In this document: piece after piece, positions 8 to 56,377 of the stretch
Numbering within the stretch: position 1 is the first letter of the stretch
Layout of the letters: the number at the start of each line of letters is the position of its first letter
DNA from: Carpediemonas membranifera BICM
Taxonomy: Eukaryota > Protista > Fornicata
NCBI GenBank assembly: GCA_019828565.1
Contig: JAHDYR010000064.1
Location: 248,001 to 312,000 of the forward strand
DNA length: 64,000 bases
Direction: 5' to 3'
Translations under genes and position numbers: made by a program
The notes under the pieces: generated by a model
The model's database searches: none
What the model was told of the DNA's origin: nothing
Seen by the model: only the letters and a program-made list of their open reading frames with translations

Positions 8-949
8 TTAAACAACGTTTACGGGGTCGTTATTAGCGAACATCACAACGTTTTCCACGACAATCTCGACCCTCCTTTCGAACGCCTGCTTGGTGGCATA
101 TGCGATGTGGGGTGTGAGCGATGTTCTCGGGGCACCCAACATTGGATGGTCCTGTGCCAGTGGCGGCTCAATGTCAAACACGTCAATGGCCGCATGCGCC
201 AGGTGGCCTGCGTGCAGTGCTGCTGCCAATGCTTCCTGGTCTACAATGGGGCCACGGGCAGTGTTGATGAGGATAGCGTCAGGTTTCATGGTGGCAAGCT
301 CCATGGCTCCAATAAGGCCGCGCGTGACTGGGGTGAGTGGGAGATGGATGCTGACGATGTCTGAACCGTGCAAAACCTCATCCAGGGGTGCATACACACC
401 AGGGAAGTCGGGGCGCTCCGTCCGGCTGAAGCCCAGAACTTCACAGCCCATCGCCTTGAAGATCTGCGCAGTGTAGCATCCGATAGCACCTGTGCCAATG
501 ATTCCTACCGTCTTCCCGCGAAGATCCTGGCCAACACGTCCATCGCGGCCCTCGGATAACCGTGTGGCTGCGTCGCTGAGGACGAAATCACGGAGGGCGG
601 AGATGGCCATGCCCAGGGCCAGCTCAGCCACGGGGACGGTGCTGTAGCCTGAGGCGTTGCATACGGTGATGCCGTGAGCGTGGCAGTAAGCAACGTCGAC
701 GAGATCTGTGCCTGTGAAGGCCACGGAAATCATCTTGAGCTTGGGGAGGCGAGAAATGACGCTCTCCCTGAACGGGATGTTGGCAAATATGACAGCCTCG
801 GCGTTCTCGGCACGGGAAACGAGTTCACCCTCATTAGTTGTCCGCGAGTTGAAGACAACGAGAGAGTGGCCATTCTGCTCAAGCTTGGCCTTAGCAGCCT
901 CAATGGCGCCATCAGAAATCTCTAGCTTGTCGATGAGTGCTACAAGCAT
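8..949 (-). CDS. D-isomer-specific 2-hydroxyacid dehydrogenase (glycerate/hydroxypyruvate reductase-like)
   Basis: Rossmann motif GIIGTGAIG, INTARG, DVFDIEPP and TPHIA (catalytic Arg/Glu/His); 313 aa, intronless. Confidence 0.9.
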   Translation of the reverse strand: MLVALIDKLEISDGAIEAAKAKLEQNGHSLVVFNSRTTNEGELVSRAENAEAVIFANIPFRESVISRLPKLKMISVAFTGTDLVDVAYCHAHGITVCNASGYSTVPVAELALGMAISALRDFVLSDAATRLSEGRDGRVGQDLRGKTVGIIGTGAIGCYTAQIFKAMGCEVLGFSRTERPDFPGVYAPLDEVLHGSDIVSIHLPLTPVTRGLIGAMELATMKPDAILINTARGPIVDQEALAAALHAGHLAHAAIDVFDIEPPLAQDHPMLGAPRTSLTPHIAYATKQAFERRVEIVVENVVMFANNDPVNVV

Positions 950-34498: not shown

Positions 34499-35350
34499 TT
34501 CGCGAGGCAGCTGTGCCCATTTATGCGATTTATGGCAAATGCAAACCGAGTATGCGACTAATCGTGCTAGTTCTGAAGAGAGTGGCTATGGTATGATATG
34601 TCATATGGTGAGTTGGGTTGGGATGATATTAGACGAGGATGATGGAAATGGTTCTTGGTTGACCAGAGTTGGCCATCAAGACGAGACAAAGCACTGCCAG
34701 CGGCTCGCCCCAGTGGCAGTACATGTGTGTACATAGTATGTATGTGAATATGGGATAATCTGCAAGGGCGCATGTCAAAGGTGATTGGCATGGATGAATG
34801 AAGGCGACGAGTGTCAGCACGGAGCAGGCGTGGATACTGTACATCGGCACTAGGTATCCCACTGCGGCATGCATTATGACCTTTCCGTCACTCGAGCAGC
34901 GTCAGGAGTCGGTCGACGTGCCCCACCATTCTCACAGTCGCAGCGGCAGCATCAAACTTCACCACGTCTTCTGGTTTCATGTATGACCTTAGGATGAGGT
35001 AGTAGCTGTCGCTGAGGTGCAGGATCGTGGTGATGCAGTCGTGTTCTCGGGTATGGAGGATTGACAGCGCTGTCTGGCATAGTATGTCGCACAATGGCGA
35101 GGAAACTGATAGTAGTTTGTGAAATATGTCCAGGGAATCAGAGGTATCTGTGCCTACTTCCGCGACTGTCGCGAATTTGGACTTTTTCCTCCGCACGACA
35201 GCGCAAAACCGCGCTCGGGATGTACTGGCGTCCATTTCCACTATTTCAGACAATACACCCTCTATTAGCCCAGCATTCTTCGTTGCTGGAGCTCGTTTCC
35301 AGCATGTTCTAAACATAGTGATCGGCAGCCAAAACTGCGCCCCTCCTAAC

Positions 35351-35417
35351 AGAAGTCTGCTATAGACGATTGAGAGTCTTACTTTACTGCTTGCACTGTG
35401 CACTCTATGATACTTCA
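35351..35417 (+). mobile_element. 67-bp miniature derivative of the 54396-55071 element, 5-bp TSD CTAAC
   Basis: 35352-35375 equals the reverse complement of 55047-55070 (24/24) and 35388-35417 equals the reverse complement of 54396-54425 (30/30). CTAAC flanks both sides (35346-35350, 35418-35422). Confidence 0.9.
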
Positions 35418-35445
35418 CTAACAGTTCCAACTAACCGCTTGTCAT

Positions 35446-54272: not shown

Positions 54273-54395
54273 GCTGGATAATTCGAACCTCGGCCTTGAG
54301 TTTTTAATAAAATAAGCGTGAATTTTGTGCGCATACAGCAGGGTGTAGCAAGGTATAGGCACTAAGCTGCGTCCCAGTGTCATGCTCAGGCGACA

Positions 54396-55071
54396 TGAAG
54401 TATCATAGAGTGCACAGTGCAAGCACTGCGTCTCTCCACTTCAATTAGCTTGCCCGGAGGCGAAGACTAGCGGCTGGTTAGCCGTAATTGGTGTATTGGG
54501 GTTATAGTTGGGAAGACGGGCTGAAGGTCTTGGATTTCTGAAAGCACTGGCTTGATACTGTGCATCCATCATGAGGCCGCAATCCAAGATGTTCTGTGCA
54601 GCAGTCTTGTCTCTGTGGGAGAGATTGAGCCAAGTGGATGTAGTAGGATCGGAATTGAGGCGTTGCTGTCTGTACCATGGAGCACCTTGACAATTCGGGT
54701 TGTGGCATCGCATCGTGCGCCTCGTGTAGCGAGTTCTACGGAACCTCGCGCGGGAGAAGGGGCAGACGAGTGAGATACTGCAGTCTTCCGATACTGATTT
54801 ATAAAAATTTATATAAATCTACTTTATTCTCCTCCCTGGAGGGTCCCGTACTGGGGGACGCCGATCGGCCTCTCCTATGCGACGTCCTCCCGGAGGAGTG
54901 GCTGGTCTCGGCTGGCCGTTTGTAACATACCAAGGGATTAAATTCCATAAACTGCACAATGACTCAGGGCAAGAATGACCCAATCAATTGGTCACCACAG
55001 CTGCCTCCTCTCCCGGTGGTTGATGACCCCCGACGATGATGACTGATCTCAATCGTCTATAGCAGACTTCA
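54396..55071 (-). mobile_element. 676-bp non-autonomous DNA transposon, TGAAGT...ACTTCA termini, 5-bp TSD CGACA
   Basis: CGACA at 54391-54395 and 55072-55076; terminal inverted TGAAGT/ACTTCA; both ends recur in the 35351-35417 mini-element. Confidence 0.9.
54441..54818 (-). pseudogene. C-terminal fragment of a Fanzor/TnpB-like RuvC nuclease
   Basis: Open frame VSEDCSISLVCPFS...RRTMRCHNPNC...HRDKTAAQNIL...RP matches the V.E..TS..C..C...C..C...RD..AA.NI RuvC-II/Zn-finger/RuvC-III layout. The N-terminus is missing and the second Cys is lost. Confidence 0.7.
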
Positions 55072-55112
55072 CGACAGCACTCCGCACTTTATGGCAAGAA
55101 ATCTTCGACATC

Positions 55113-56273
55113 ATGGAGACGGCGAACGGAGCGATTGGATTGGCCGTTCCAACCGTAGATAGTAACAGCAGCATTGAAGATGTTAAGCTGCTCACGGACG
55201 AGAACGAACAGCTGCAGAAGCGCTTCCTGGAGTGTCGATCTGAATGTGACTCCCTTAGAGCTGCTTTGGCGGAGTATGAGAGCACTCTTCAGCTTGCTCT
55301 ATATCGTGTTGAGGATAGTAGCAGTACACAATGCGCTTTGCTTCAGGACCGGGTCAATCTCGTGAACAAGTCGAATAGCCGGCTGACGTCGGACTACAAG
55401 ACCGTTGTTCGGTCCTTCCAAGACCTTCAGACGAAATATGAGAACCTCAAGCTTGATACCAACGCAAATGCTGAGAACGTGAAGCTTCTTAAGGACGAGA
55501 ACCAAGAGCTTCGCCAAAAGATGAGCGTCGCGGAGGATAAGTTCCAAAGCATGCGGCAGGTGTTCGAGACAAAGCTCGCCACCATGAAGGAGCGCGTCGC
55601 TGAAGAGCAGGCTAAAACGGCCGAATCTGAGCGCCGAGCCGCTGACCTCGAGGAAGCCGCTCGGGCCAAGGATGACATGGTAGCTCAGGCCAGAGGCGAC
55701 CTCGTGAAGGCGAACAACACCATCACTGACGCGAGACGGGAGTGCGACATGCTCCGTATGAAGGTGGACTCTGCTCAGCGGGCGGCGGAGGACGCCGAGA
55801 GTTCCCGGGTTCATGAGGCACGGCGGGTCGAGAGTGCGCGGCAGACTATCGCACAGCTGCAGGCTAAGCTGGCCACCGAGGGTGAGCGCTACTCTGATGC
55901 GCAGGAGACGATTACTGGCCTCAACGGCGAGCTCGGCGGAATGAAGCAGTTACAGGCACAGAACGAGCAACTGCAGAAGGAGATCGAGGCCCAGAAGGTC
56001 GAACTCAACGCAGTTAAAGTCCGCGCCTTCGATGCAGCCCAGGAGCTCGAGCGTCAGCGTATCGCCAGTGCCAGCGGAGGAGACGAAGAATGGAAGGAGA
56101 GACTCCAGCTCGTCGTCCAGCAGGCCGAAAGGTACCGGGCAGAAAGGGATGAGGCCAGGACAGCCCTGGAAGCGAAGGAAACGGAGCGGGTCCAGCTTGT
56201 GGAGCTGTGCAATGAGCTCGTTGGAAAGCTCGAGGCGACCGCGGCAGAGGGCGAGACGGAGGCGGCAGAGTAA
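55113..56273 (+). CDS. TACC-domain coiled-coil protein
   Basis: SDYKTVVRSFQDLQTKYENLK and KETERVQLVELCNELVGKLE match TACC C-terminal motifs (SFSDLFKR; ENEELT.ICDDLI.K). Confidence 0.7.
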   Translation: METANGAIGLAVPTVDSNSSIEDVKLLTDENEQLQKRFLECRSECDSLRAALAEYESTLQLALYRVEDSSSTQCALLQDRVNLVNKSNSRLTSDYKTVVRSFQDLQTKYENLKLDTNANAENVKLLKDENQELRQKMSVAEDKFQSMRQVFETKLATMKERVAEEQAKTAESERRAADLEEAARAKDDMVAQARGDLVKANNTITDARRECDMLRMKVDSAQRAAEDAESSRVHEARRVESARQTIAQLQAKLATEGERYSDAQETITGLNGELGGMKQLQAQNEQLQKEIEAQKVELNAVKVRAFDAAQELERQRIASASGGDEEWKERLQLVVQQAERYRAERDEARTALEAKETERVQLVELCNELVGKLEATAAEGETEAAE

Positions 56274-56377
56274 ATGTATTTTCAGAGTTGAGTGTGTTGG
56301 CGGGGTGTGGAGAGTGATTTATGGGTGATACATGAGGAAAATGTATTGCGCGGAAACGAAGCAGCGTTTGTCGTGCA

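What the first reader, a model, noticed from the sequence alone, without database searches (positions are those of the whole stretch)
54391..55076. Fanzor-like RNA-guided nuclease remnant inside a TG...CA, 5-bp-TSD DNA transposon
Seen: a 676-bp element (54396-55071) bounded by TGAAGT...ACTTCA and flanked by the direct repeat CGACA. On the minus strand it reads VSEDCSISLVCPFS...RRTMRCHNPNC...HRDKTAAQNIL, ending 45 bp before the right end. Known: an acidic residue just before the Zn finger and an RD..AA.NI RuvC-III motif characterise Fanzor and related TnpB; TG...CA ends with short TSDs are typical of integrase-like DDE transposases (Ginger, IS3, Mu, LTR types). Inference: this is an internally deleted copy of a Fanzor-carrying family mobilised by an integrase-like transposase. 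I do not recognise this pairing among described Fanzor carriers. A short ORF from ATG 54948 (MEFNPLVCYKR...) may be the original 5' end, with the deletion join in the AT-rich stretch at ~54800-54825.
Basis: partly seen in the sequence, partly recalled or inferred. Interest (0 to 1): 0.92.

Follow-up and report, generated by a model that had tools for sequence, protein, structure and literature searches.

The report
Dead Fanzor transposon copy beside promoter
This is a broken, shortened copy of a small jumping element of the protist Carpediemonas membranifera that carries only a Fanzor (CRISPR-Cas12-like) nuclease gene; the family inserts 12 bases in front of a host promoter motif with integrase-like ends, a kind of carrier not described for Fanzors.

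Summary
54396-55071 is a mobile-element copy with TGAAGT...ACTTCA ends and a CGACA duplication on both sides. It is one of at least 40-60 copies of a family whose ~2.5-kb full-length form encodes a single ~650-aa protein.

That protein is a very divergent Fanzor1. A profile of it hits the solved SpuFz1, PpFz1 and GtFz1 structures (E 1e-14 to 4e-8), and its model matches TnpB/Cas12 RuvC domains.

The window copy keeps only the last 379 nt of the gene: a damaged zinc ribbon, RuvC-III and a 45-nt tail. It also holds about 240 nt of unrelated filler and 55 nt of the other end.

- The "acidic residue" lies in the filler, not at RuvC-II.
- The MEFNPLV ORF is not the gene's 5' end.

5-bp duplications hold in 10 of 13 copy pairs and in two sister families. 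No transposase lies inside any element.

New here: 26 of 28 right ends sit exactly 12 nt upstream of a core-promoter-like motif (GCAGTTTATG), always in one orientation.

An integrase-type enzyme acting in trans is the best reading, but I could not identify it. The scan has found the same kind of Fanzor element on other pieces of this genome; their proposed Ty3 link was not verified here.

The parts
54391..54395 (.). Left target-site duplication CGACA
   Evidence: Identical to 55072-55076. 5-bp duplications hold in 10 of 13 family-A pairs.
54396..55071 (-). Whole 676-bp non-autonomous element (Fanzor gene sense is the minus strand)
   Evidence: Ends TGAAGT...ACTTCA. nt 1-379 are 94-99% identical to at least 40 other copies. 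It belongs to a short-derivative subfamily with L002-L005, L007, L008 and L013.
54396..54425 (.). Terminal 30-mer (TG...CA) that full-length copies repeat, in direct orientation, at the start of their right-hand 65-bp unit
   Evidence: 118 genome matches with up to 3 mismatches, control 0. The inner copy is seen in L010, L013, L031, L035, L040 and others.
54396..54774 (-). Retained 3' end of the Fanzor gene plus its 45-nt tail; presumed omegaRNA template
   Evidence: Homology to full-length copies L031 and L034 covers exactly nt 1-379. tblastn gives 89% identity to the C-terminus of the L031 protein. Contigs of RNA-like runs cover it.
54690..54764 (-). Zinc-ribbon remnant CPFS...CHNPNC (first pair damaged: full-length copies read CPFC)
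54585..54617 (-). RuvC-III motif HRDKTAAQNIL
   Evidence: Aligns with nRD..A.NI of SpuFz1, PpFz1 and GtFz1 in the profile hits.
54775..55016 (.). Filler unrelated to the full-length element. Part is shared with the short subfamily; about 143 nt (roughly 54804-54946) are unique to this copy. It holds a reverse-oriented promoter-like motif at about 54946-54957.
   Evidence: No contig of runs X1/X2 lies on 54822-55009.
55017..55046 (.). 30 nt homologous to full-length positions about 2332-2361 (just before the purine tract). The purine tract and the inner 30-mer are missing in this copy.
   Evidence: WINel 622-651 against L034el 2332-2361.
55047..55071 (.). Right terminal 25 nt, ending CAGACTTCA
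   Evidence: 100% identical to the right ends of L010, L013 and L034.
55072..55076 (.). Right target-site duplication CGACA
55084..55094 (+). Core-promoter-like motif GCACTTTATGG, starting 13 nt after the element's right end
   Evidence: GCA stands at +13..15 in 11 of 11 local right flanks and in 26 of 28 genome sites. The motif is about 9-fold enriched 23-69 nt upstream of the first ATG of long ORFs.
55113..56273 (+). Host gene (386-aa coiled-coil protein) whose promoter region was hit
   Evidence: ORF. A contig with a poly(A) end at 56286 in run X2.
35353..35417 (-). Solo 65-bp unit of the same family (30-mer plus 35-nt right end), flanked by GTTAG and again 12 nt upstream of a GCAGTTTTGG motif

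Best explanation
What it is:
- The feature is a dead, internally deleted, non-autonomous copy of a ~2.5-kb mobile element of Carpediemonas membranifera.
- The element's only gene is a very divergent Fanzor1 (TnpB/Cas12-like, presumably RNA-guided) nuclease, read on the minus strand.
- The copy keeps the 379-nt 3' end of that gene up to the element terminus. In characterised Fanzors this is where the omegaRNA is made and reads out into the flank.
- It also holds unrelated filler and the last 55 nt of the other end.

Shown:
- The family inserts with TG...CA ends and a 5-bp duplication.
- It inserts in one orientation, exactly 12 nt upstream of a core-promoter-like motif of a host gene.
- No copy encodes a transposase.

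Inferred:
- Insertion is done in trans by a retroviral-integrase-type DDE enzyme. The genome holds hundreds of Ty3/gypsy integrase genes.
- That enzyme is positioned by a factor bound at the promoter motif, or reads the motif itself.
- The full-length right end looks like a purine tract followed by a 65-bp mini-LTR, and the left end carries only the first 30 nt of that unit. So the ends seem LTR-derived, but canonical reverse transcription cannot rebuild them.
- The window copy can at most supply an RNA or a pair of ends. It cannot make an active nuclease.
For: Family and deletion:
-.

Fanzor1 identity:
- The Carpediemonas-only profile reaches proteins that carry PF07282 at E 1e-6 in 1.8 billion sequences.
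- The widened profile hits SpuFz1 at E 1.1e-14, PpFz1 at 1.7e-11 and GtFz1 at 3.5e-8, with aligned TDGV, DPGxR, EFRTS.VCP.C and RD..A.NI motifs.
- The top 40 Foldseek hits are all Cas12/TnpB/Fanzor.
- VIA-align gives Z 10-11 over residues 385-622.
- The Glu stands six residues before the zinc finger, as PMC13565253 states for Fanzors.

Ends and duplications:
-.

Target motif:
- 11 of 11 local flanks and 26 of 28 genome sites have it, against about 2% expected by chance.

Other points:
- Purine tract, inner 30-mer and solo units.
- No second ORF.
- Integrase is abundant (716 or more rve candidates, in RT-RNaseH-IN order).
- One Ty3 family has a purine tract followed by an LTR of about 125 nt.
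- RNA-like contigs lie over the retained part.
Against: - No integrase or other DDE gene was found between these ends.
- No Ty3 copy bounded by the family-A or family-B unit appears in the coordinate lists.
- The one Ty3 family whose 3' ends I could read does not land at the promoter motif (0 of 5), and its LTR does not align with the Fanzor units.
- Retroviral integrases are not known to excise integrated DNA, so the source of a free linear donor is unexplained.
- The left end holds only 30 of the 65 nt of the unit.
- No primer-binding site was identified.
- An omegaRNA is not demonstrated. Covariation across three families was inconclusive, and the family-A end folds no better than shuffles (z -1.3).
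- No intact family-A ORF was seen among the copies I could read.
Confidence: 0.6

Rival explanations
1. It is an ordinary cut-and-paste DNA transposon of an unrecognised or very divergent DDE superfamily. Its autonomous partner lies elsewhere in the genome or is extinct. The TG...CA ends and 5-bp duplication are coincidental resemblances to integrase products. The transposase itself reads the promoter motif.
For: - The family shows a graded series of internal-deletion derivatives with both ends kept, the classic mark of abortive gap repair.
- A 65-bp two-end mini-element is abundant.
- The short TIR-like match reads TGAAGT..ATAGA at both ends.
- S. punctatus Fanzor elements likewise have inverted repeats and no transposase (PMC10432273).
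Against: - The ends are asymmetric in all three families; only 3-6 nt are inverted.
- A purine tract plus a direct repeat of the left terminus is conserved in three families that share only about 45% protein identity.
- No candidate transposase was found.
- By unchecked scan notes, the only other DNA transposons noted in this genome have 2-bp duplications and CAT ends.
Confidence: 0.22
2. It is a true non-autonomous LTR retroelement. It is transcribed antisense to Fanzor, reverse-transcribed by Ty3 enzymes from the purine tract, and integrated as cDNA.
For: - The purine tract sits directly before a TG...CA unit.
- Solo units carry duplications, like solo LTRs.
- The duplication is 5 bp.
- In families B and C a promoter-like motif lies in the sense of such a transcript within the first 15 nt of the unit (pattern).
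- Ty3 elements are abundant.
Against: - The left end has only the first 30 of 65 nt (family A), or about 34 of about 160 nt (family B), so the two LTRs that reverse transcription must create are absent.
- No primer-binding site was recognised.
- The window copy itself lacks the purine tract and the inner repeat, yet has a perfect duplication.
- PMC13565253 states that no retrotransposon is known to encode a Fanzor, and that one would gain nothing from it.
Confidence: 0.12
3. The RAG1/Transib-like transposases of the giant cargo transposons of this genome move the Fanzor elements. Transib gives 5-bp duplications.
For: Such transposons exist in this genome according to earlier scan notes. The Transib superfamily is known for 5-bp duplications (PMC10045372 discusses duplication length as a superfamily mark).
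Against: The notes give those elements CAT... termini and 2-bp duplications (unchecked). The Fanzor ends share no CAC/CAT terminus.
Confidence: 0.03
4. Fanzor itself, guided by its RNA, cuts at promoters, and the element is copied in by repair (homing). No transposase is needed.
For: The fixed position next to a conserved motif resembles a TAM-like requirement. TnpB and Fanzor are proposed to drive homing (PMC13565253).
Against: - Exact 5-bp duplications and defined TG...CA ends are products of staggered strand transfer, not of homology-directed copying.
- The motif lies 8 or more nt from where a guide would start, not adjacent as a TAM should be.
- Solo 65-bp units and protein-less copies carry the same duplications.
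Confidence: 0.03

Closest known systems
Fanzor1 elements of Spizellomyces punctatus (Spu-1; SpuFz1, PDB 8GKH)
   Same: - It is a Fanzor1 protein, and SpuFz1 is its best solved-structure match (E 1.1e-14).
- It is a multi-copy element that encodes only the nuclease.
- No transposase lies between the repeats.
- Protein-less 'ghost' loci keep the RNA-coding end (PMC10432273).
   Different: - Spu-1 has 30-nt inverted repeats. Here the ends are asymmetric TG...CA, with a direct repeat of the left terminus inside the right end, a purine tract, 5-bp duplications and fixed-distance insertion upstream of a promoter motif.
- The host is a metamonad.
- The protein is so divergent that Pfam does not score it.
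Ginger2/TDD and other integrase-related DNA transposons (Ginger1, IS3EU/GingerRoot, IS481EU)
   Same: TG...CA termini and a 4-5-bp duplication (Ginger2: 4 or 5 bp, PMC10045372). Movement would be at the DNA level.
   Different: No rve-type transposase ORF lies in any copy. There are no long TIRs. No Fanzor-Ginger pairing appears in the carrier lists I read (PMC13565253, PMC3627910).
Ty3/gypsy LTR retrotransposons and their non-autonomous derivatives (TRIM/LARD); promoter- or tRNA-gene-targeted integration as in yeast Ty3 (own knowledge)
   Same: - TG...CA ends and a 5-bp duplication.
- A purine tract before the right-hand unit, and solo units.
- Position-specific insertion next to a transcription start region.
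- Ty3 elements with very short LTRs live in the same genome.
   Different: - The left end is only a 30-nt piece of the unit.
- No primer-binding site was found.
- The cargo is a nuclease gene in antisense, not gag-pol.
- A matching autonomous Ty3 was not found here.
IS200/IS605 TnpB-omegaRNA systems
   Same: Same nuclease superfamily. The gene's 3' end abuts the element terminus, where the guide would be read from the flank.
   Different: A different transposition chemistry: here there is a duplication and TG...CA ends, not HUH peel-and-paste. The Glu is relocated next to the zinc finger, as in Fanzors.

Membership tests
Fanzor1 (eukaryotic TnpB homologue) | Significant sequence-profile similarity to characterised Fanzor1 proteins | tested here: met
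   Profile A2 hits SpuFz1 at E 1.1e-14, PpFz1 at 1.7e-11 and GtFz1 at 3.5e-8. The Carpediemonas-only profile reaches PF07282-bearing proteins at E 1e-6. The window peptile alone gives no Pfam hit; it joins the family through 89% identity to the C-terminus of the L031 protein.
Fanzor1 (eukaryotic TnpB homologue) | [quoted passage not shown] | tested here: met
   Met in full-length family copies and in the sister families: GFDPGAR, NEFRTSLVCPFC, HRDK.AA.NI. The rule is stated in PMC13565253. It is not met in the window copy itself, where RuvC-I and RuvC-II are deleted and only RuvC-III remains.
Fanzor1 (eukaryotic TnpB homologue) | TnpB/Cas12-type RuvC fold with an inserted zinc ribbon | tested here: met
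   The model of the intact sister-family protein has pLDDT 65-85 over residues 385-625. Foldseek's top 40 hits are all Cas12/TnpB/Fanzor. VIA-align gives Z 10.3 to ISDra2 TnpB, 10.8 to mimivirus Fanzor2 and 9.8 to GtFz. The N-terminal half is poorly modelled.
Fanzor1 (eukaryotic TnpB homologue) | omegaRNA from the 3' end of the gene that runs about 15 nt past the element end | tested here: inconclusive
   RNA-like contigs cover 54396-54821, and some run past 54396 into the flanks of other copies, but contigs show neither ends nor strand. Folding gives z -1.3 for family A, -0.7 for B and -4.3 for C. No covariation was seen.
Fanzor1 (eukaryotic TnpB homologue) | RNA-guided DNA cleavage | not testable with these tools
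   Needs biochemistry.
Integrase-related DNA transposon (Ginger2/TDD-like) | An rve-type DDE transposase encoded between the ends | tested here: not met
   Only the Fanzor ORF is present in full-length copies of three families.
Integrase-related DNA transposon (Ginger2/TDD-like) | TG...CA termini and a 4-5-bp duplication | tested here: met
   10 of 13 family-A pairs have one, as do L049, L052 and L050.
Non-autonomous LTR retrotransposon | Two complete direct LTRs | tested here: not met
   The right end holds a 65-bp unit; the left end holds only its first 30 nt. The same asymmetry appears in families B and C.
Non-autonomous LTR retrotransposon | A polypurine tract directly upstream of the 3' LTR | tested here: met
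   A tract of about 27 purines in 30 precedes the unit in family A. Purine-rich tracts also occur in B and C. The tract is absent from the window copy.
Non-autonomous LTR retrotransposon | A primer-binding site after the 5' LTR | not tested
   No tRNA set of this genome was compared. Nothing obvious follows the 30-mer.
Non-autonomous LTR retrotransposon | An autonomous partner with matching LTR ends | tested here: inconclusive
   None is seen among 100 listed family-A sites, 100 listed family-B sites and the 150 best rve hits; one adjacency on contig C6 looks like nesting. The lists are partial, and further genome DNA could not be fetched.

The most novel reading that the evidence does not exclude
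Fanzor1 nuclease genes in Carpediemonas have become the sole cargo of elements that borrow LTR-type ends and are inserted by a resident Ty3/gypsy-type integrase. That integrase would be tethered to the Pol II core promoter, which gives base-precise, oriented insertion: family A lands 12 nt upstream of the motif, and families B and C land between the motif and the start codon, so that the host promoter would drive Fanzor. This would be the first integrase- or LTR-type carrier of an OMEGA nuclease. It would also be a case where the nuclease cannot be serving excision-repair homing in the accepted way.
Probability: 0.4. Interest if true: 0.85.

Novelty: new variant of a known kind. Interest (0 to 1): 0.7.

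Why it matters
The current view of Fanzor biology is that these nucleases ride cut-and-paste, HUH or recombinase transposons and pay their way by restoring excised copies (PMC13565253). A family with integrase-like ends would strain that view, since its other features point the same way: a 5-bp duplication, LTR-like architecture, no transposase and base-precise promoter targeting. Either Fanzor has a second kind of carrier, or it does a different job there.

The Carpediemonas proteins are also among the most divergent Fanzor1s. Pfam does not see them, and only seven non-Carpediemonas relatives turned up in 1.8 billion proteins. One sister family has an intact 642-aa ORF that could be tested.

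The fixed 12-nt spacing also gives a handle on the otherwise unstudied core promoter of a metamonad. The window element itself is only a dead remnant; the interest lies in the family.

Tried and rejected
Searches that gave nothing useful:
- Pfam on the window peptide and on single full-length proteins gave nothing or sub-threshold PF07282.
- Single-sequence and paralog-only profile searches of PDB sequences gave nothing relevant. Only the profile widened with remote relatives worked.
- The word-based homologue search found only Carpediemonas proteins.

Tests with a negative or inconclusive result:
- The left flanks of 29 insertions show no conserved position or k-mer.
- The search for a conserved omegaRNA structure across families A, B and C gave a poor alignment with 10 weak pairs.
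- The LTR of the one readable Ty3 family does not align with the Fanzor units, and its five 3' flanks lack the promoter motif.

Steps that were blocked:
So I could not read other Fanzor paralog families, more Ty3 LTRs or the flanks of the solo units.

Readings rejected:
- The MEFNPLV ORF as the gene's 5' end.
- The SEDC Glu as RuvC-II.
- RAG1/Transib-like mobilisation.
- Fanzor-only homing as the source of the duplications.

Not used as evidence:
- Depth figures from the contig runs. The tool warns against ranking by them.

Full report
**Observation.** The window is contig C63:248001-312000 of a 24.2-Mb, 69-contig genome. Names attached to homologous proteins identify it as Carpediemonas membranifera, a free-living metamonad.

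At 54396-55071 the sequence begins TGAAGT and ends ACTTCA. CGACA stands directly on both sides. The minus strand reads a peptide with CPFS...CHNPNC and HRDKTAAQNIL. Its stop codon ends 45 nt from the terminus at 54396.

**A family, and this copy is a deletion derivative.** The first 379 nt of the element match at least 40 other places in the genome at 94-99% identity, out of 133 candidates. The 30-nt terminus occurs 118 times against 0 for the control pattern.

Copies form a nested series that share the left end for 379 to about 1880 nt and then jump to the right end. Full-length copies are about 2.47-2.5 kb (L031:501-2991, L034:501-2968).

They hold one gene, on the minus strand, of about 650 aa. 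It is read as a 600-aa ORF with a late frameshift in L034, and as two ORFs of 313 and 343 aa in L031. I saw no intact family-A ORF among the copies I could read.

The window copy consists of four parts:
- nt 1-379 of the full-length element;
- about 240 nt of filler, partly shared with a short subfamily (L002-L005, L007, L008, L013) and partly unique to this copy;
- 30 nt that match full-length positions of about 2332-2361;
- the last 25 nt of the right end.

Members of the short subfamily sit at different sites with their own duplications (for example L013, CATTC). So the derivative was itself mobilised in trans.

- DNA homology to the full-length gene stops at 54774. This was also seen as a contig that continues into the full-length sequence at that point. 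The Glu in SEDC (54780-54791) is therefore filler, and the real RuvC-II Glu is deleted. The first cysteine pair is also damaged.
- The ORF starting MEFNPLV is not the gene's start. The family's protein begins MTSIYTVKF.

**The protein is a Fanzor1.** The genome holds many paralogous families at 43-58% identity. One of them has an intact 642-aa ORF (L049:1361-3289, minus strand).

All families share GFDPGAR, (N/S)EFRTS.VCP.C...C..P.C and HRDK.AA.NI. The Glu lies six residues before the first cysteine, which a 2026 review gives as the Fanzor hallmark (PMC13565253).

Sequence evidence:
- Pfam barely sees the proteins, and a word-based search finds only Carpediemonas proteins without domains.
- An exhaustive profile search of 1.8 billion representatives found, outside Carpediemonas, only seven proteins at E up to 1e-3. 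Four of the five best carry the TnpB zinc-ribbon domain PF07282 above threshold, and the fifth carries it below.
- A profile that includes them hits the solved Fanzor1 structures SpuFz1 (E 1.1e-14), PpFz1 (1.7e-11) and GtFz1 (3.5e-8), with all motifs aligned.

Structural evidence:
- An AlphaFold model of the intact paralog is poor overall (pLDDT 52.7) but usable over residues 385-625.
- Its 40 best Foldseek matches are all Cas12, TnpB or Fanzor.
- The independent aligner gives Z 10-11 to Cas12p, mimivirus Fanzor2, Cas12f and ISDra2 TnpB over residues 385-622.

**Ends and duplications.** Five-base duplications flank 10 of 13 family-A pairs that I could read: CGACA, TATGG, CATTC, TAGTT, TGTCA, CCTTT, ATGCG, CTGAA, GTTGG and GTTAG. 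The three failures include two copies that share one right flank and look rearranged.

Two sister families also have TG...CA ends and 5-bp duplications: B ends TGTGC...CCACA, and C ends TGTTG...GCACA. Examples are L049 GTAAG, L052 CCGGC and L050 GACCC.

The two ends are not proper inverted repeats; only 3-6 terminal bases are inverted. In all three families the first 30-35 nt of the left end recur in direct orientation near the right end, directly after a purine-rich tract.

In family A this gives a right-hand 65-bp TG...CA unit, made of the 30-mer plus 35 nt. That unit also occurs alone, with its own 5-bp duplication. One example lies in the window at 35353-35417, and there are at least 14 elsewhere.

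No copy of any family contains a second gene.

**Target site.** Earlier notes of this scan on other parts of the genome said that such elements land at a fixed distance from a promoter motif. I tested this for family A.

- The left flanks of 29 insertions show nothing.
- All 11 right flanks that I hold have GCA at positions +13 to +15 after the terminus, as part of GCA(G/C)(T/G/A)(T/A)T(T/A).G, always in the same orientation.
- Genome-wide, 26 of the 28 sites with the exact right end have GCA there, against about 2% expected.
- In the window the motif lies 23-69 nt upstream of the first ATG of 9 of 37 long ORFs, where about 1 is expected.
- 8 of the 11 flanks open a long ORF within 8-60 nt of the element end.
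- Here the motif is at 55084-55094, and the host gene starts at 55113. A contig with a poly(A) end at 56286 shows that this gene is expressed.

So family A inserts 12 nt upstream of a core-promoter-like element, with Fanzor pointing away from the host gene.

**Who inserts it.** TG...CA ends, a 5-bp duplication, asymmetric ends, a purine tract before an LTR-sized unit, solo units and base-precise, oriented insertion next to a promoter are together the signature of retroviral-type integrases.

- The genome holds at least 716 candidate integrase-core matches. The ones I examined have the Ty3/gypsy domain order RT-RNaseH-IN.
- One Ty3 family has a purine tract followed by an LTR of only about 125 nt.

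That is why I rank an integrase acting in trans first. It remains an inference, for these reasons:
- I found no Ty3 or Ginger-like element bounded by the family-A or family-B unit among the coordinates available.
- The one Ty3 family I could read neither aligns with the units nor targets the motif.
- I could not fetch more genome DNA.
- Canonical reverse transcription cannot produce an element whose left end has only 30 of the 65 nt of the unit.
- Integrases are not known to excise.

The main rival is an unrecognised cut-and-paste transposase, which the deletion series would fit. By unchecked notes, the RAG1-like transposons of this genome have 2-bp duplications and CAT ends, so they are poor candidates.

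**RNA.** Two runs behave like poly(A) RNA: they show a poly(A) end on the host gene and have no contig on the unique filler or the intergenic DNA. They hold contigs over 54396-54821, including one that continues into the full-length gene.

Contigs show neither strand nor ends, and I do not use their depth. Folding and covariation do not establish an omegaRNA.

**Comparison and novelty.** Fanzor-only, transposase-less multi-copy elements with protein-less 'ghost' loci are known from S. punctatus (PMC10432273).

The published carrier lists name Mariner, Sola2, MuDR, Harbinger, Helitron, Crypton, hAT, EnSpm, piggyBac and IS607-like elements. They state that no retrotransposon is known to encode a Fanzor (PMC13565253, PMC3627910). 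No paper in the held library mentions Fanzor together with Carpediemonas or Metamonada, and the genome paper does not discuss transposons.

The family is therefore a new variant of a known kind. The window element itself is an inactive remnant.

The scan has already reported the same kind of element from other pieces of this genome. What I tested independently agrees with those notes on the duplication, the LTR-like but non-canonical ends, the solo units and the promoter targeting. I could not confirm their Ty3 attribution.

Noticed in passing
L049:1217-3780, L052:1276-3843, L055:1266-3772 (family B); L050:1287-3512, L056 (family C): The sister Fanzor families land the other way round. Their right end lies 9-13 nt from the reverse complement of the promoter motif (CATAAACTGC and variants). 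The host gene's ATG follows 12-32 nt beyond their left end (about 146 nt in L050). So they sit between the promoter motif and the start codon, with Fanzor in the sense of the host promoter. One of the host genes is CDK-like.
   Followed up: partly
L049:1217-1235, L050:1287-1305 and their inner copies: The first 15 nt of the family B and C termini contain a match to the promoter-like pattern (GCGCAGGATTAG, GCGCAGTATAAAC), pointing antisense to Fanzor. Family A's 30-mer has only a one-mismatch match, on the other strand.
   Followed up: no
window 35348-35422: A solo 65-bp unit of family A. Its last base reads T instead of A, so the duplication can be read as 5 bp (GTTAG) or 6 bp (TGTTAG). The same ambiguity appears in L041 (CTGAA or TCTGAA).
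   Followed up: partly
window 54946-54957: The filler of the short subfamily carries a reverse-oriented promoter-like motif (CATAAACTGCAC) next to a hypervariable AT-rich spot. In the window copy alone, 143 extra nt sit at that spot.
   Followed up: partly
window 54450-54774, run X6: A DNA-like run labelled as a different organism holds a 338-nt contig that is 99% identical to the element's left part. It holds nothing of the neighbouring host genes apart from a low-complexity stretch. This could be cross-contamination or a shared element.
   Followed up: no
L051 and L056 (contig C65, about 23 kb apart, opposite orientation): The two family-C copies have swapped flanks: the right flank of one equals the left flank of the other (GTGAG). 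This suggests an inversion by recombination between them.
   Followed up: no
L011, L021, L026 (contig C7): Three family-A copies share the same right flank and host gene start but have different left flanks and no matching duplication. This looks like a segmental duplication or recombination that begins inside the element.
   Followed up: no
L063:2470: One Ty3 copy is interrupted 14 nt before the end of its pol ORF by another insertion that begins TGTGGTTCG.
   Followed up: no
L016 and L022 left flanks; L055:3772: Family-A elements are inserted 2-3 nt beyond the right terminus (…ATACCACA) of family-B elements at two or more loci. This suggests nested or adjacent targeting of the same promoter sites.
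   Followed up: no
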